DNA of 64,000 nucleotides, taken from positions 1,364,001-1,428,000 of the forward strand of contig BQFW01000014.1 of assembly GCA_020891255.1 (NCBI GenBank), written 5' to 3'. Positions 58,927 through 64,000 of this stretch are shown here, piece by piece. Every line of letters starts with the position of its first letter. Positions within the stretch are counted from its first letter, which is position 1. Made by a program: the position numbers and the translations under genes. The notes beneath the pieces are model-generated. The model was given only the letters and a program-made list of their open reading frames with translations, had not been told where the DNA came from and did no database searches. The stretch comes from Entomortierella parvispora E1425 (taxonomy: Eukaryota > Fungi > Mortierellomycota).

Positions 58927-60010
58927 ATGGGTATCGTCTATAAGAAATACCTGACTGGGGAGAAAGTCCTCACCTGCAACAACTGCAAGACCCACTTTGC
59001 CACCTGCGATAGCATCATATCAAAGGTATTAAACGACAGACTGCTCTTCCTCCTCTTCCTCCTCTCGCTTTCCTCACCGTCCAGGAAAGAAGATCAGGCA
59101 TGAGAACCTCTATTGTTTCCATCAACCAAGTATTACTCGCACATACATGGACCAAAAAAAGGACAGAGGGGTGTGGGAGAATAAGGAGACAGAGGACATT
59201 GTCATTCTGCGCACCATCGCCTCGGACACGAACGGGCGCGAGGACACTCGCACCCGCTCTTTTTTAAAAAAGGCGTTTGCCAAGGGCCTTACTGGGACCT
59301 GAAACCAGAGCACACGAATAGCAAACAGATGACCTGCACCACGAGCTTTCCTTCTTTGATGAAAAGGGTCTCCCCTTCTGACTCCTCCTCTCTCTATCTG
59401 ACGCATAGAACTTTCACGGGCAAAATGGTCGGGCCTTTCTGTTCTCGAACGTGTATGTGGATAGCAAGCGTCTTTTGGAGTTATATCCTGTGACGGCACA
59501 TGTTCTCTGTAGCCTTCATCTCTAACTTCGCTGGCATCTTCCTTCTAGTATCAACGTGTACACTGGTGATGCTGAAGACCGGCTGATGCGGACAGGCCAG
59601 CACACTGTCCAGGACATCCACTGCGCCGAATGCTCGACGGTCGTCGGCTGGAAATATGTAAGTTTGTTAGAGTCACTTCCACGCAAATAGCCGGGAGAAT
59701 AGGCTTTATTACAAAAGAAGAGCGTGATCATGATCATTTGGCCAATTCTGCCTCTTTCTCCTGGGGCACATTTGCACTTGAGCAGGAGGAGCAATGACCA
59801 GTTCGCCTTATTGCCAGTACTGCTCTTTCTGTTGGTTGCTGTATCTAACGGCTTCATCCCTGTCGTTTCTCTTTCTTCCCGTCTCCCTATTGTTAATTCA
59901 CTGACACCCATCCGTATTGAAAATAGCTGGTTGCGTACGAACAGTCGGAGCGATACAAGGAGGGACGCTTCATTCTGGAGAGGACCTTGCTCCACTACAC
60001 ATCGACGTGA
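58927..60010 (+). CDS. Yippee/Moh1 (YPEL) family zinc-binding protein, 4 exons
   Basis: [22 protein letters not shown]|[15 protein letters not shown]|[28 protein letters not shown]|[18 protein letters not shown]. Confidence 0.93.
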
Positions 60011-60727
60011 ATAGAGAATCCATCTTGCATGGATGCACTGATCAGCCATTGTTGCCTTTACACCATCGCGCTTTTTACTCATGATAAGTACAACGTGCAT
60101 ACGTTGCAATGCTTTCTGCTTCTTTCGACGCCCTTGCAGTTTCATGAACGGGGCTCTGTCTCCTTGACACCACTCTCTTCTATGTTCATCCTACTTCCAG
60201 CCCTTCTTTGCCTTGGTAACCATTTCTGATATCATGTTCGTTTCTATAGAAATCGCATCATGTTTTGATGCTTTTCATTTTCGTTTGCACTCCTCCCAAC
60301 CCCTTTTCATTTCAGAAAAAAAGATATATTTCCCTTCCAATGTGTCATTGAGAAATAAAAATGAGCCTCAGTTTGTCCAGAGATCCACCCGCGGTTGTCC
60401 CTTCCTAATGGGTTGATACTTTTTCCTCATGGGCTTCGCCTAGCGTTCTTTGCTCCTTAAAAAAAGAACTTTGGTGTTGGCGACAAATAAGAAAAATTGC
60501 ATAGAGAACGAGAGCGTTGCACAAAAATGTTGACAACGTGGCACCTTGTTTCGTCTCAATGGCCAGATCTTCATTCCAAGGTCTAAATGCGAATAATTAA
60601 TAATCTATAATCTTACTTAAATAAATACAATATTTTTATAATTTATTCTAACTATTAAGATTAGAGATGCAAAGATGGTAGGTATAGAAATAGGCAAAGA
60701 TGGTAGGATGGAACTCTCTTTGTTCCT

Positions 60728-61387
60728 TTAGGCCATGGTCATCAAGAGAGCAGCAGCACCAATCAAGACAGAATGGAAGGTAGCCATGCTCTGGAAGACA
60801 CCGACAGCGCTGGAGGGCTTGGAAGAAGTGGATGGGCTAGCAGAACCGCCATGGCCATCAGTCGTGGTGGCGTTGGCGACGGTGATAACAGCAGCGGGGA
60901 AGCCAGCAGTCTTTCCAGAGGCATCAGGGATGTTGGTCCAGTTGTTCCACGCGCCGTTGGTGCAGTGTTGGTAGACAGACCAGTACAAGGGACCCTCCAT
61001 CACGGGCAACTTGAACTGAAGACCGAAATCCTCGTAGTAGCTGTCGAGCAAGTTTCCGCCAGACCAGGTAATGGATCCAACTGTGGTGTTGATGGTACCG
61101 GTAGGGGTGGTGATAGGAGTGTCCAAGGGGACCATATTGATGTTGGTGATCCAGGGAACGGTGGCCTTGGGCTTGACTCCGGAAACACCCTTGGGGATCT
61201 CGACAGTGACGGAGTCAGTGGCATTACCGTCACAGCCGTGAGGGACACGGAAGTTGGACTGGAAGTAGCCACCAGAAACTGCCACGGAAGGGTTAGCAGT
61301 GACATGGGCCTCGACGGAGGAGGAGCCGAGGAGAATGGCAGAGACCAAGGCAGAGGCCAAGACGGTAACGGAGCTAGAGAACTTCAT
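60728..61387 (-). CDS. Secreted, probably GPI-anchored YcnI/DUF1775 copper-binding-domain protein, intronless
   Basis: Signal peptide ending VEA, then mature H28-VTANP; FRVPHGC; T..VTVEIP.GV..VKP; ITWSGG..YEDFGLQFKLP..LYWSVYQHC..WT, which is the YcnI pattern. Ser/Thr linker, then SSA and a hydrophobic tail. TATA (TATAAAG) lies ~100 nt upstream. Confidence 0.85.
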   Translation of the reverse strand: MKFSSSVTVLASALVSAILLGSSSVEAHVTANPSVAVSGGYFQSNFRVPHGCDGNATDSVTVEIPKGVSGVKPKATVPWITNINMVPLDTPITTPTGTINTTVGSITWSGGNLLDSYYEDFGLQFKLPVMEGPLYWSVYQHCTNGAWNNWTNIPDASGKTAGFPAAVITVANATTTDGHGGSASPSTSSKPSSAVGVFQSMATFHSVLIGAAALLMTMA

Positions 61388-61725
61388 TGTGGATGGTATT
61401 AGATATTATGGAGGGGGGTGGTAGAGGACAGGAGGGTGGAGAGAGAAGAGTGAAAAAGAGAAGAGTGGAGGGGAGACAGGGTCTCTTTATAGTTTGTGTT
61501 GAAGAAGGAAAGAAGGCAGCAGAAGGCGCGAGTCCACCATTCCCACAGGTCTGGGACTGAATAGCGCGTTTCTCACTCGGAAGAGGAGTACAGACCCGAG
61601 TTGAACAACCGCAATGAACATGAATTCACAGAAGGAGTCTGACACCGTATCGGCGCCGTCTAAGTGCAAGGGATTCGCGAGCAGCAGAATGGCGTTTTTT
61701 TTCTATTGTTTGGCCTTTGAAAGGG

Positions 61726-62864
61726 TTGACTGCCCCGGGTAAGCACAGGGGGGCAAAAGTAAGGTTGACAGCGTGTACCGCACCAGGGGCGGACACCGCT
61801 GTCAATTGTCAAACCTTCTTTTTTGCTCAGCGGTCCATCGATTCGATCCAATCTGTGAGTCCTCGGTAAGTTGTCGAGTTTGTCAAGCCTATGTGTACTT
61901 TTGTTTTCCCTTTTGGTTGAGTGAAAGAAATGAATGTTTAATGTAGCACCACGCAGGCACAACCTGGACAGGATAACCCTCCGAATGCACGCACAGGTGC
62001 GCACCCAATTCATCCAACGGCTATCAGTGAACACGAAAGCTATTTGTCGTCGAATTGCGCTGTAATGTATTGTACGCACAATGCAGTCTGTTTGCCGTCA
62101 GATAGAGGTCGGGGAGACACCTTACTTCTCCTTCTCTTTCTTTTTCTCTACCTCTGTGTCCCGGAGTTCTGAGTCAGCTCTTTGTGATCAGACATCTGCA
62201 TCGCAACCGCCAGGTTCCCGTCCGTGTGTTCGATGGATCCACTGATATGTGCTGTATACATGCATGCAGTACCCGCCGCCCCAAGACCCAACCATCTTTC
62301 TCGATCTTTGTTTTAGCGCCAACCCAGCCGCCCAGTGTCTCTCCAGCCCCTCTGGGTCAATGGAAGGTTCCATGTCTTCTTTCTGACTCGGGAGAGTGTG
62401 TCATTTTAGTTGGGTTCCGTTTTGACGTTCTGGGATTGAAATAATTTTTTTGACATTTTTTTTTTTTTAAAAAAAAAATCACCCTGTCAAAAGAAAAGAA
62501 CACCAAGACCCGGGCTCGGAAAGAACCCTCATGGCATCGAAGCTGGAGATAAGTGAGCAAGAAGCACATCTCCTCCTGCCTAAACGAGGAGATGAAATGG
62601 GGGGAAGAGGTTGGTGCGGTGCTCTAAAGATCAGGCTCACTCTCTTTGTTTGTCGGATAAAGTTTTTTTTTTGACAGGTTGAACCACTTTGACATTCTGC
62701 TATTGACAACGGAGGCGTCGGACCTGTGGCAGGGACCCACGCCTTGCATGAGAAGGGGGGGGGGGGGGTATTCCGCAATGGTGTACCTTCAAGATTTTTC
62801 TCACTGACCTGTCAAAAAAAAAGTTGACTCTGGACCACCACGAGGTTGTCAAAAAAGTTGATTG
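61726..62864. promoter_or_regulatory. Cluster of TTGACA/TGTCAA sites (11 exact, plus TTGACT x2 and TTGACG) and one TTTGCTCA in the YcnI upstream region
   Basis: Exact hexamers start at 61765, 61800, 61807, 61881, 62450, 62485, 62671, 62689, 62703, 62810 and 62847. TTTGCTCA is at 61822. Confidence 0.55.
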
Positions 62865-63154
62865 TGAGATGAATCCGATCCCTACGTCAGCCTGTACAGT
62901 TCTCTCTGTTCATCCGGACATGAAGCTGCGGAAAAAATGAGAAACTACGGATTGTTTTTCCCCCTAGATATTATTATAGATATCTTCACATAAGCCAAAG
63001 AGAAAAGAGAAAACAATAAGATATGAATTTGTTTGGTTTATTGATGAATTTGTTTCTTGGATGGTATATACACAAAGATATGAAGTGATGGTTGAATGTT
63101 TGGTGAGCGCTAGAGAGGGTGATAGGGCTGAAGGAAGCCTAACAGCTTGGCCAT

Positions 63155-64000
63155 TTATCCGCAACCAGCGCAGCCGCTGGATGAACCATTTGAAGCAGCT
63201 CCATTCTTGGATTGGACCATGACCATGTTCCTCTGTCGCGAGAACACGACCGCGCCCACGCAGAGTCCCAAGATCACGGCAAAGAATAACGCCACGTTAA
63301 AGGTCATGGTAACCAACATAAGCGCGTATCCCAACGTGGTCTCCACAAACATCAACACGGATCGGATCAAGTTCTGGCGCACCTCCCGGGCAGACCAAGG
63401 CTGACGCCACAAGTAGACCCAATTCATCAGGATGGAGCTGGAGCCGGAGGGTCCCACGGTCCTGTTCGAGTTCAACGATACTGAAGTCAAAGGTTCCGAC
63501 GGGCCCGTCTTGGCAGTCTCGGCTTCGGCCTCAATCTCAGCAGCCAATTGCTCGGCCCATTGGATATCCAGGCCGGTACGGTAGGCGGCAATGGTCTGAT
63601 AAAACAGTGTCAAAAAGAAGAGCGCGAACCAAGTGCCAGCGTATTGGCCTGCGGATCGAGGCACCCAAGTCTCAAAGAGGACATAATCCTCAAACCCAGT
63701 GTGGAAATACATCCTCATCTTGGGGGGATTCATGTCTGCACCTCCCACGCCAGCAGCACAGTACTCGGACTGATCAAAGCCCATGCTTGAGGCTGATGGG
63801 GTGCACATAGACTTCCAAGTCGAGCATTGGCTCATCTCTGGCATGGCCTTGCAAAGGATTGCATAGGTACCGAGGGTGTCGCATTCGGCTGCATAGGCGT
63901 TGGGGGCGGGCTTGGGGCAGCGCTCGCATCCAGCCATGTCCATCTCTGTGCAGATACCAATCACAAGAGCGGAGGCACTCTTGGTCGTGGGGAACGACGG
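63155..64000 (-). CDS. Ctr (SLC31) high-affinity copper transporter with a Cys/Met-rich N-terminal ectodomain; 5' end beyond the window
   Basis: MRMYFHTG..VLFETW; TM1 YAGTWFALFFLTLFYQ; TM2 LGYALMLVTMTFN (MxxxM); TM3 FFAVILGLCVG (GxxxG); C-terminal GCAGCG*. Confidence 0.92.
   Translation of the reverse strand, partial: PSFPTTKSASALVIGICTEMDMAGCERCPKPAPNAYAAECDTLGTYAILCKAMPEMSQCSTWKSMCTPSASSMGFDQSEYCAAGVGGADMNPPKMRMYFHTGFEDYVLFETWVPRSAGQYAGTWFALFFLTLFYQTIAAYRTGLDIQWAEQLAAEIEAEAETAKTGPSEPLTSVSLNSNRTVGPSGSSSILMNWVYLWRQPWSAREVRQNLIRSVLMFVETTLGYALMLVTMTFNVALFFAVILGLCVGAVVFSRQRNMVMVQSKNGAASNGSSSGCAGCG

What the first reader, a model, noticed from the sequence alone, without database searches (positions are those of the whole stretch)
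60728..64000. Candidate fungal copper-capture module: cell-surface YcnI-type Cu-binding protein in tandem with a Ctr importer
Seen: two adjacent same-strand genes that both point to copper. One is a Ctr transporter (MxxxM, GxxxG). The other is a signal-peptide/GPI-type protein with a YcnI (DUF1775) domain whose mature N-terminus would be His. Established: bacterial YcnI binds Cu(II) through its N-terminal His and is encoded with the copper importer YcnJ in the Bacillus ycnKJI operon. Cryptococcus uses a GPI-anchored His-brace protein (Bim1) with Ctr1 for copper uptake. Inference: this fungus may have assembled an analogous surface Cu-scavenger plus importer pair from a bacterial-type domain and a eukaryotic Ctr, possibly co-regulated. 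I am not aware of such a module being described in early-diverging fungi.
Basis: partly seen in the sequence, partly recalled or inferred. Interest (0 to 1): 0.85.

Follow-up and report, generated by a model that had tools for sequence, protein, structure and literature searches.

The report
Fungal YcnI-like protein beside copper importer
A soil fungus (family Mortierellaceae) encodes a surface-tethered relative of the bacterial copper-binding protein YcnI next to a copper importer; this pairing recurs in distant early-diverging fungi and the genes share a dense promoter motif, pointing to an undescribed copper-capture gene cluster whose function is still untested.

Summary
Window 60728-61387(-) encodes a 219-aa protein with a full-length DUF1775/YcnI domain (Pfam E 2e-33). 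It has a signal peptide ending just before His28 and a hydrophobic, GPI-type C-terminus. Window 63155-64000(-) is the 3' part of a Ctr transporter (E 3e-34) with MxxxM, GxxxG and Cys-Met ectodomain motifs.

The interpretation passes the genomic tests it set itself:
- The Ctr-DUF1775 pair is kept in four other Mortierellaceae genera.
- It reappears in Calcarisporiella and two chytrids.
- It is missing in six other lineages.

The module is larger and older than proposed. A free GPI-type copy of the Ctr ectodomain (CTRA protein) belongs to it. In Calcarisporiella and Synchytrium a DOMON/cytochrome b561-type gene does too.

In Mortierellaceae, the DUF1775 promoter and the Ctr/CTRA divergent promoter carry 7-11 TTGACA sites each (expected 1-3), although the promoters cannot be aligned.

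One correction: the Glu copper ligand of B. subtilis YcnI is absent. An invariant His50 (PHGC motif) and the Trp are kept.

Copper binding, copper regulation and uptake remain inferred, and no RNA run was listed. No paper in the searched library describes fungal DUF1775.

First-reader notes of this scan on the same genome had flagged the motif array and the CTRA neighbour.

The parts
60728..61387 (-). DUF1775/YcnI-like gene, single exon, 219 aa
   Evidence: ORF. Pfam PF07987 E 1.9e-33. An identical 219-aa protein is on record and there are about 35 Mortierellaceae orthologues. The AF2 model core has pLDDT about 90, and its best PDB matches are YcnI 7MEK/7ME6 at E 4e-9, TM 0.82.
61307..61387 (-). 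Predicted signal peptide (residues 1-27, ends ...VEA)
   Evidence: Hydrophobic N-terminus. The A-x-A|H junction is conserved in all orthologues and in bacterial homologues. Cleavage is inferred.
61304..61306 (-). His28 codon, predicted first residue of the mature protein (equivalent of B. subtilis YcnI His27)
   Evidence: Aligns to residue 1 of chain 7ME6. His is present in 140 of 142 homologues.
61232..61243 (-). PHGC motif (residues 49-52): invariant His50; Gly51 at the position of YcnI Glu50; Cys52
   Evidence: Alignments to 3ESM and 7ME6. His50 is present in 140/142. Cys52 co-varies with Cys142: both present in 132, both absent in 7.
60938..60940 (-). Trp150 codon (equivalent of YcnI Trp137), inside an N-W-T sequon
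   Evidence: Alignment to 7ME6. Trp is present in 139/142. Sequon list.
60731..60877 (-). Ser/Thr-rich linker and C-terminal hydrophobic tail (candidate GPI-attachment signal)
   Evidence: The tail has no charged residue after it and the same layout is seen in all fungal homologues. Bacterial homologues end in a TM segment plus Arg/Lys or in a His-rich soluble end. GPI anchoring was not tested.
61388..63154 (.). Intergenic region and promoter of the DUF1775 gene, with 11 TTGACA/TGTCAA sites (61765-62852), 7 of them TTTGACA
   Evidence: Dinucleotide shuffles expect 1.5 sites and 0 of 1000 reach 11. This is the richest stretch of the 64-kb window. No Rfam match.
63155..64000 (-). Ctr copper transporter, 3' 281 codons plus stop; the N-terminus lies beyond the window end
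   Evidence: Pfam PF04145 E 2.8e-34. 66% identical to residues 119-384 of the Podila orthologue.
63752..64000 (-). Second Cys-Met (CTRA-type) ectodomain repeat of the Ctr, with CxxMxMxxC and CxxMxxMxxC
   Evidence: Motif coordinates. Homologous to the free CTRA protein of Podila at 36% identity, E 3e-28 for the Podila pair. Domain as named in bioRxiv 10.1101/2023.10.19.563170. The start of this part is approximate.
63242..63349 (-). TM2 with MxxxM (63305-63319) and TM3 with GxxxG (63254-63268)
63158..63175 (-). C-terminal Cys motif (GCAGCG) of the Ctr
   Evidence: Conserved in Podila.

Best explanation
The window holds two of the three genes of a conserved Mortierellaceae copper-acquisition cluster. 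The three genes are a free GPI-type CTRA protein (just past the window end), a CTRA-Ctr importer, and a GPI-type DUF1775/YcnI-like protein. Proposed mechanism, all inferred: (1) An unidentified factor that recognises dense TTTGACA arrays drives the genes together. (2) The DUF1775 protein is secreted, cleaved to expose His28 and tethered at the cell surface. There it captures Cu(II) with its amino terminus and His28, probably with His50 as a second imidazole ligand in place of the Glu of B. subtilis YcnI, stacked against Trp150. (3) Cu(II) is reduced. Calcarisporiella and Synchytrium encode a DOMON/cytochrome b561-type protein in the same cluster; in this genome the reductase would be encoded elsewhere. 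(4) Cu(I) is passed to the Cys-Met CTRA domains and through the MxxxM pore of the Ctr. What is shown here: domain identity, fold, residue conservation, synteny and motif enrichment.
For: Domain and fold. Ligand conservation over 142 homologues: His28 in 140, His50 in 140, Trp150 in 139, Gln140 in 140, with a co-varying Cys pair. Synteny within Mortierellaceae. In Lobosporangium the downstream flank differs from Podila, yet the trio is kept. In Actinomortierella the Ctr/CTRA pair is inverted but stays next to DUF1775. Synteny in other phyla: Calcarisporiella has Ctr, CTRA, DUF1775 and DOMON-cyt b561. Phlyctochytrium has Ctr and DUF1775 as divergent neighbours. Synchytrium has Ctr, DUF1775 and CTRA-DOMON. 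All linked Ctrs are of the CTRA type. Shared cis element: 7-11 TTGACA sites in each of 7 promoters from 4 genera, against 0.9-2.8 expected. In five of the seven promoters none of 1000 shuffles reached the observed hexamer count, and in the other two one did. TGTCAAA is the most enriched 7-mer, 18-fold over flanking DNA. The promoters share no alignable sequence. Precedent: YcnI binds Cu(II) at about 2 nM through His27, Glu50 and Trp137, and DUF1775 genes neighbour copper importers (PMC8424229). ycnI and ycnJ deletions give the same copper-limitation phenotype (bioRxiv 10.1101/2025.05.23.655588). CTRA domains are proposed to acquire copper ahead of CTRA-Ctr transport. Cbi1/Bim1 works through Ctr1 in Cryptococcus (PMC9258870 abstract).
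Against: There is no expression or copper-response data; no RNA run was listed. The Glu ligand of YcnI is absent, and no member of the PHGC subgroup has a solved structure or a measured copper affinity in what I searched. I had no model coordinates, so the proximity of His28, His50 and Trp150 was not checked. The TTTGACA motif does not match the yeast Mac1 consensus TTTGC(T/G)C(A/G) as I recalled it from memory; only one such site occurs in the 1.77-kb region. The signal that controls the array is therefore unknown. Linkage to Ctr is absent within 10 kb in Conidiobolus, Basidiobolus, Hyaloraphidium, Umbelopsis, Catenaria and Saprolegnia. The TTGACA array is not seen in the three distant linked loci. 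Loss of the free CTRA protein CTR3 in Chlamydomonas gave no phenotype, so accessory proteins may be dispensable.
Confidence: 0.6

Rival explanations
1. The DUF1775 protein binds copper at the surface but serves a role other than uptake. It could deliver copper to secreted or wall-bound cuproenzymes, as bacterial PCuAC/PcuD-type proteins are thought to supply oxidases. Or it could buffer and sequester excess copper in the cell wall. Under this reading its linkage to Ctr reflects shared regulation, not a hand-off.
For: Bacterial DUF1775 domains of the same PHGC subgroup are often fused to PCuAC (PF04314) chaperone domains. [quoted passage not shown] Cbi1/Bim1 also affects copper stress resistance through the cell wall (PMC9258870 title and abstract).
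Against: The repeated neighbour is an importer with copper-capturing ectodomains, not an exporter, metallothionein or cuproenzyme. A reductase-type DOMON gene in the same cluster fits uptake chemistry.
Confidence: 0.2
2. The genes are co-regulated surface proteins, but the controlling signal is not copper. The TTTGACA array could respond to iron, oxygen, development or general stress. In that case DUF1775 has a redox or structural wall role.
For: The motif differs from the known fungal copper elements I could recall, and its factor is unknown. DOMON/cytochrome b561 proteins also reduce iron (my own knowledge, not checked here).
Against: Two of the three cluster members belong to families defined by copper handling. 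The third keeps the two most conserved YcnI copper-site residues.
Confidence: 0.12
3. The adjacency has no functional meaning. It is inherited gene order within one family, with chance neighbours elsewhere.
For: Mortierellaceae are related, so their synteny is not independent evidence. Six of nine outgroup lineages lack the linkage.
Against: Immediate or near-immediate adjacency recurs in three lineages from two other phyla, in varied orientation. By my rough estimate, a genome of about 10,000 genes with a handful of Ctr genes would give well under 1% chance of this per genome. The trio survives a local inversion and changes of flanking genes. Non-alignable promoters keep the same site array.
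Confidence: 0.05

Closest known systems
Bacillus subtilis YcnI and the ycnKJI operon (PDB 7MEK/7ME6; PMC8424229; bioRxiv 10.1101/2025.05.23.655588)
   Same: Same Pfam family and fold. Both have an N-terminal His exposed by signal-peptide cleavage, the conserved Trp, a C-terminal membrane tether, and a copper importer encoded next door.
   Different: The Glu50 ligand is replaced: Gly51 sits within an invariant PHGC motif, with a co-varying Cys pair. The tether is GPI-type rather than a TM helix. The partner importer is a eukaryotic Cu(I) channel (CTRA-Ctr) and not the CopC-CopD-YtkA protein YcnJ. There is no YcnK repressor. The genes are separate units with long promoters, not an operon.
Cryptococcus neoformans Bim1/Cbi1 (X325 LPMO-like) with Ctr1
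   Same: The logic is the same: a GPI-anchored extracellular protein with an N-terminal His copper site working with a Ctr importer.
   Different: The fold and family are unrelated. Pfam finds only DUF1775 here and the best structural matches are YcnI. In Mortierellaceae the partner genes are physically clustered.
CTRA-CTR transporters and the free CTRA protein CTR3 of Chlamydomonas; P80 of Dictyostelium (bioRxiv 10.1101/2023.10.19.563170)
   Same: The window's Ctr has Cys-Met ectodomain repeats. Its orthologues sit head-to-head with a free copy of that ectodomain. That paper places proteins of 'Fungi incertae sedis' in this family.
   Different: The fungal free copy is GPI-type and has a His-rich mature N-terminus. 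That paper does not mention DUF1775 or gene clustering.
Proteobacterial and actinobacterial DUF1775 proteins of the PHGC subgroup, some fused to PCuAC (e.g. Bradyrhizobium PcuD, as cited in PMC8424229)
   Same: They share the PHGC motif, the Cys pair, Gln140 and the Trp.
   Different: They are bacterial periplasmic or TM-anchored proteins with different neighbours. In a quick tree the eukaryotic sequences group apart from them.

Membership tests
DUF1775 / YcnI family (PF07987) | Match to the family profile above the curated cutoff, over the whole domain | tested here: met
   116.4 bits against a cutoff of 25; profile 1-146 of 146.
DUF1775 / YcnI family (PF07987) | Beta-sandwich (cupredoxin/Ig-like) fold of solved YcnI | tested here: met
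   The AF2 model core has pLDDT about 90. Foldseek gives 7MEK, 7ME6, 8UM6 and 3ESM as the top six hits at E 4e-9 to 2e-8, with TM by target 0.78-0.83.
DUF1775 / YcnI family (PF07987) | His as first residue of the mature protein (YcnI His27) | tested here: met
   His28 aligns to residue 1 of chain 7ME6 and follows an A-x-A type site. The cleavage itself is inferred.
DUF1775 / YcnI family (PF07987) | Conserved Trp next to the copper site (YcnI Trp137) | tested here: met
   Trp150 aligns to it; present in 139/142.
B. subtilis-type mono-histidine brace (His/Glu/Trp ligand set) | Glu ligand (YcnI Glu50) | tested here: not met
   The position is Gly51 in PHGC, and Gly in 131/142 of this subgroup. 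The protein is therefore not filed under the mono-histidine-brace subgroup.
DUF1775 / YcnI family (PF07987) | Binds one Cu(II) ion | not testable with these tools
   Needs purified protein with a native N-terminus, then EPR, ITC or ICP-MS.
Ctr copper transporter family (PF04145) | Profile match; MxxxM in TM2 and GxxxG in TM3 | tested here: met
   119.3 bits against a cutoff of 25.3. MLVTM and GLCVG found.
CTRA-CTR subfamily (Strenkert et al. 2023 preprint) | Cys-rich CTRA ectodomain repeats N-terminal to the Ctr domain | tested here: met
   Two Cys-Met motifs lie in the part inside the window. The Podila orthologue has two repeats, homologous to the free CTRA neighbour at E 3e-28. I did not align directly to the Chlamydomonas proteins.
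ycnKJI-type operon | CopC-CopD importer YcnJ and repressor YcnK encoded with YcnI | tested here: not met
   The neighbours are Ctr, CTRA and Yippee genes; no CopC/CopD was reported in any fungal locus. The cluster is analogous to the operon, not a member of it.
Bim1/X325 LPMO-like proteins | LPMO-like fold and sequence family | tested here: not met
   DUF1775 is the only Pfam match, and no LPMO appears among the listed structural matches.
GPI-anchored protein | Omega site plus C-terminal hydrophobic signal, and an N-terminal signal peptide | tested here: inconclusive
   The layout fits and is conserved. No GPI or signal-peptide predictor was available.

The most novel reading that the evidence does not exclude
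Early-diverging fungi have an ancestral, genomically clustered extracellular copper relay that Dikarya no longer use. A DUF1775 protein with a true two-histidine brace (His1 plus the invariant His of PHGC) captures Cu(II). A DOMON/cytochrome b561 protein reduces it. CTRA domains carry Cu(I) to a CTRA-Ctr pore. In Mortierellaceae the whole set is under a new copper-responsive regulator that binds TTTGACA arrays. This would be the first eukaryotic function for the YcnI family and a counterpart of Bim1-Ctr1.
Probability: 0.3. Interest if true: 0.85.

Novelty: new variant of a known kind. Interest (0 to 1): 0.7.

Why it matters
It is poorly understood how eukaryotic cells gather scarce Cu(II) outside the membrane and hand it, reduced, to Ctr channels. 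Bim1/Cbi1 in Cryptococcus is the main worked example.

This locus offers a second, unrelated solution built on the bacterial YcnI fold. Its parts are written side by side in the genome: a Cu(II) binder, Cu(I)-binding CTRA domains, an importer and, in some lineages, a reductase. That layout makes the relay directly testable.

It also gives the uncharacterised PHGC subgroup of DUF1775 a concrete ligand hypothesis. Most of the best-scoring homologues found here, bacterial ones included, belong to that subgroup.

Finally, it supplies a candidate cis element for finding the copper regulon and its regulator in Mortierellaceae, a family used for lipid production and common in soil and around plant roots.

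Tried and rejected
- **RNA evidence.** Two run searches listed only DNA runs of the source organism and no RNA run.
- **Known copper elements.** It occurs once in the 1.77-kb promoter, so it is not the dominant signal.
- **Literature on the motif.** A search for TTTGACA in fungi gave nothing relevant; the hits were mostly plant WRKY W-box papers. A WRKY-type or TALE-homeodomain factor is only a guess.
- **RNA genes.** Rfam found nothing in 60000-64000.
- **NCBIfam.** No match for either protein, as expected for a bacterial naming library.
- **Recent transfer from bacteria into this fungus.** Rejected. The nearest relatives are other early-diverging fungi, and all named eukaryotic sequences fall in one group in a quick tree (SH-aLRT 87). 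The careful tree search did not finish, so the deep branching and any ancient transfer remain open.
- **AFDB entry A0A507DG15 as a DUF1775-DOMON fusion.** Not relied upon. In Synchytrium microbalum the two genes are separate, 162 bp apart on one strand, and sum to about the same length. The 'fusion' may be a merged gene model.
- **DOMON homologue in this locus.** None found in the window or in the Mortierellaceae loci.
- **Geometry of His28, His50 and Trp150 in the model.** Could not be measured, because coordinates are not exposed.
Full report
**What is in the window**

On the minus strand, 60728-61387 is one uninterrupted ORF of 219 codons. Pfam matches it to DUF1775 (PF07987) at E 1.9e-33, and the whole 146-position profile aligns to residues 28-170. 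The profile begins exactly at His28, which follows a hydrophobic leader ending in V-E-A. After the domain comes a Ser/Thr-rich stretch and then a 14-residue hydrophobic end with nothing charged behind it. Four N-x-S/T sequons are present.

Upstream on the same strand, 63155-64000 is the last 281 codons of a Ctr transporter (PF04145, E 2.8e-34). It carries MLVTM in TM2, GLCVG in TM3, a C-terminal Cys motif and two Cys-Met motifs in the ectodomain. The frame runs off the window. Compared with the 384-aa Podila orthologue, about 118 N-terminal residues are missing.

The 1767 bp between the genes contains no Rfam match. Orthologous loci have no annotated gene in the equivalent space. Signal-peptide cleavage and GPI anchoring remain inferences.

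**Is it a YcnI?**

An AlphaFold2 model built on 22 homologues has a confident core, with pLDDT about 90 for residues 30-80 and 100-150. Its six best PDB matches are B. subtilis YcnI (7MEK, 7ME6, 8UM6) and the Nocardia DUF1775 protein 3ESM, at E 4e-9 to 2e-8 and TM by target 0.78-0.83.

Damle et al. showed that YcnI binds one Cu(II) at about 2 nM through His27 (amino terminus and imidazole) and Glu50, with Trp137 adjacent. About 60% of family members keep all three residues. Most of the rest, mainly proteobacterial, keep His and Trp but not Glu (PMC8424229).

Profile alignment to chain 7ME6 places the window residues as follows (same result against 3ESM):
- His28 aligns with His27.
- Trp150 aligns with Trp137.
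- Gly51 aligns with Glu50.

The fungal protein therefore belongs to the Glu-less subgroup. In an alignment of 142 of the best homologues, fungal, oomycete and bacterial, conservation is:
- His28 in 140.
- His50, the H of an R-V-P-H-G-C motif, in 140.
- Gln140 in 140.
- Trp150 in 139.
- Cys52 and Cys142 both present in 132 and both absent in 7.

A second His as invariant as the first, next to what looks like a disulfide, suggests a two-histidine site. I could not measure distances in the model, and no structure of this subgroup turned up. That suggestion is a hypothesis.

**Distribution**

The protein has orthologues at 54-77% identity in about 35 Mortierellaceae assemblies, which places the window in that family. 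A profile search of 1.84 billion representatives gave 2636 hits.

The best non-Mortierellaceae hits that carry names are all early-diverging fungi:
- Hyaloraphidium, Calcarisporiella, Umbelopsis, Conidiobolus, Basidiobolus.
- Syncephalis and Thamnocephalis.
- The chytrids Quaeritorhiza, Phlyctochytrium, Boothiomyces, Cladochytrium, Synchytrium, Polychytrium and Rhizophlyctis.
- The blastoclads Blastocladiella, Catenaria and Allomyces.
- In addition, the oomycetes Aphanomyces and Saprolegnia.

No Dikarya protein was named among the hits I could look up. That is not proof of absence.

In a quick maximum-likelihood tree, all 24 named eukaryotic sequences fall in one group of 34 (SH-aLRT 87). The oomycete sequences sit next to Polychytrium (98). 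The careful search did not finish. So the domain is bacterial in type but long resident in fungi, and this fungus did not acquire it recently.

**Synteny**

- Podila verticillata, two Haplosporangium-labelled assemblies and Lobosporangium transversale have the order: 270-aa protein(-), Ctr(+), DUF1775(+).
- The downstream flank differs between Podila (Yippee, Bap31, SHMT; the window also has Yippee-like sequence at about 59556-60010) and Lobosporangium. The trio persists in both.
- In Actinomortierella wolfii the first two genes are inverted as a unit: Ctr(-), 267 aa(+), DUF1775(+).

The 270-aa protein has a signal peptide and a mature end starting with His. It has Cys-rich repeats and a hydrophobic tail. 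It is 36% identical (E 3e-28) to the ectodomain of the neighbouring Ctr. It is a free copy of the CTRA domain as defined for Chlamydomonas CTR1/2/3 in bioRxiv 10.1101/2023.10.19.563170. That preprint places 'Fungi incertae sedis' proteins in the family and proposes that CTRA domains acquire copper before transport. It does not mention DUF1775 or clustering. First-reader notes of this scan say the same head-to-head CTRA gene lies just past the end of this window. I verified it only in the orthologous loci.

Outside the family, with 10-kb flanks, three lineages show the linkage:
- Calcarisporiella thermophila has Ctr(-), CTRA(+), two small genes, DUF1775(+) and DOMON/CDH-cyt/cytochrome b561(+).
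- Phlyctochytrium bullatum has Ctr(-) and DUF1775(+) as divergent neighbours.
- Synchytrium microbalum has Ctr(-), DUF1775(+) and a DOMON protein(+) whose N-terminal part resembles CTRA.

All three Ctrs have CTRA-like ectodomains. No Ctr lies within 10 kb in Conidiobolus, Basidiobolus, Hyaloraphidium, Umbelopsis, Catenaria or Saprolegnia.

That makes three of nine outgroup lineages with direct or near-direct adjacency, in two further phyla. This is far more than chance for a genome of about ten thousand genes with a few Ctr genes. That figure is my rough estimate, not a computed statistic.

**Shared promoter element**

The 1767-bp intergenic region has 11 TTGACA/TGTCAA hexamers out of 76 in the whole 64-kb window, and 7 of the window's 24 TTTGACA heptamers. 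It is the richest stretch of the window. None of 1000 dinucleotide shuffles reaches the observed counts, against an expected 1.5 and 0.5.

The same holds in Podila, Lobosporangium and Actinomortierella, both for the DUF1775 promoters and for the divergent Ctr/CTRA promoters. Each has 7-10 hexamers where 0.9-2.8 are expected. At most 1 of 1000 shuffles reached the hexamer count, and at most 5 reached the heptamer count.

An unbiased k-mer comparison of the seven promoters against flanking DNA ranks TGTCAAA first among 7-mers, at 45 observed against 2.5 expected. The 61 sites give a consensus of T-rich, then TTGACA, rarely followed by C.

The promoters have no alignable similarity to each other. 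The array is therefore maintained by turnover and not by inherited sequence. It is absent from the short intergenic regions of the three distant linked loci.

This is good indirect evidence that the three Mortierellaceae genes share a regulator. It says nothing about the signal. The motif is not the yeast Mac1 element as I recalled it from memory, and I found no paper on it.

**Most likely mechanism**

I put the probability of the following at about 0.6. The cluster is a copper-acquisition unit.
- The DUF1775 protein, tethered at the surface, captures Cu(II) with its free amino terminus and His28, probably with His50, against Trp150.
- Copper is then reduced. Two other lineages encode a DOMON/cytochrome b561-type gene in the cluster. 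A scan note reports a Ctr-cytochrome b561 fusion elsewhere in this genome, which I did not check.
- Cu(I) is taken by the Cys-Met CTRA domains and passes through the Ctr pore.

Domain identity, fold, conservation, synteny and motif enrichment are shown. Cleavage, anchoring, copper binding, the order of hand-offs and copper control are inferred.

The analogy with B. subtilis is real. There, YcnI and the importer YcnJ both bind extracellular Cu(II), and their deletions give the same phenotype. The fungal partner, however, is a Cu(I) channel, so a reduction step is needed that has no counterpart in the ycn operon.

Rival readings:
- A copper chaperone or buffer role not tied to uptake (0.2).
- Co-regulation by a signal other than copper (0.12).
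- Meaningless adjacency (0.05).

**Comparison with what is known, and novelty**

The protein is a member of the DUF1775/YcnI family. It is not a member of the His/Glu/Trp mono-histidine-brace subgroup, because that feature was tested and not met. The cluster works like ycnJI and like Bim1-Ctr1, but it belongs to neither.

Full-text searches found no description of a eukaryotic DUF1775 protein or of its linkage to Ctr. The search terms were DUF1775 with fungi, YcnI, YcnI-like and accession terms, Mortierella with Ctr, and Mucoromycota with Ctr, GPI-anchored and histidine brace. Databases only carry automatic names such as 'YncI copper-binding domain-containing protein'.

I rate it a new variant of a known kind, with an interest of 0.7. 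The comparative evidence is strong and the hypothesis is testable, but the function is unproven.

Noticed in passing
window 61388-63154; L001, L004, L006 promoters: A second, weaker over-represented word, GGTACA (often A/G-GGTACA-C/A), occurs 14 times in 6 of the 7 promoters against 2.4 expected. It is mostly not adjacent to the TTGACA sites. From memory, GTAC is the core of the green-lineage copper response element. No link is claimed.
   Followed up: partly
window 60935-60943 (residues 149-151): The conserved Trp150 lies inside an N-W-T glycosylation sequon that is invariant in Mortierellaceae. It is also present in several other fungal homologues. A glycan next to the proposed copper site would be unusual.
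   Followed up: no
L011:10001-12211 and L011:7467-8290: Hyaloraphidium curvatum has a 529-aa protein with three DUF1775 stretches and a further 194-aa DUF1775 gene divergently next to it. No Ctr lies within 10 kb.
   Followed up: no
L008:10001-12566: Conidiobolus coronatus has two DUF1775 genes in tandem, 203 and 209 aa.
   Followed up: no
P0068, P0081, P0170 (oomycetes); P0077 (Polychytrium): The Saprolegniales DUF1775 proteins group with a chytrid sequence (SH-aLRT 98). Together with it they have lost both members of the Cys pair (PHSY/PHSF, and Thr at position 142). This hints at fungus-oomycete gene transfer. In Saprolegnia the gene is not next to a Ctr.
   Followed up: partly
L014:11181-12602: The Synchytrium microbalum DOMON protein has an N-terminal region similar to CTRA domains. 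It lies 162 bp downstream of DUF1775 on the same strand. The 616-aa AFDB entry A0A507DG15, which looks like a DUF1775-DOMON fusion, may be these two genes merged in a relative's annotation.
   Followed up: partly
L009:18738-19418: In Basidiobolus ranarum a Cu/Zn superoxide dismutase gene lies about 8 kb from the DUF1775 gene. This may be coincidence.
   Followed up: no
P0034 (Lobosporangium, 175 aa) and P0192 (Allomyces macrogynus): Lobosporangium has a second, shorter DUF1775 record that lacks the His28 region and an internal block. An Allomyces DUF1775 protein carries the source name 'nuclear export factor GLE1', which looks like a mis-annotation.
   Followed up: no
L001:1977-2789 (Podila), L005:3154-3972, L006:5742-6545: The free CTRA protein also has a predicted mature N-terminus beginning with His (…SA|HEGPHD-type) and a His-rich stretch before its hydrophobic tail. 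Both accessory proteins of the cluster may therefore present an N-terminal His.
   Followed up: partly
window 62445-62475 and 62752-62765: The promoter contains long homopolymer runs: a T-run directly followed by an A-run, and a run of about 12 G.
   Followed up: no
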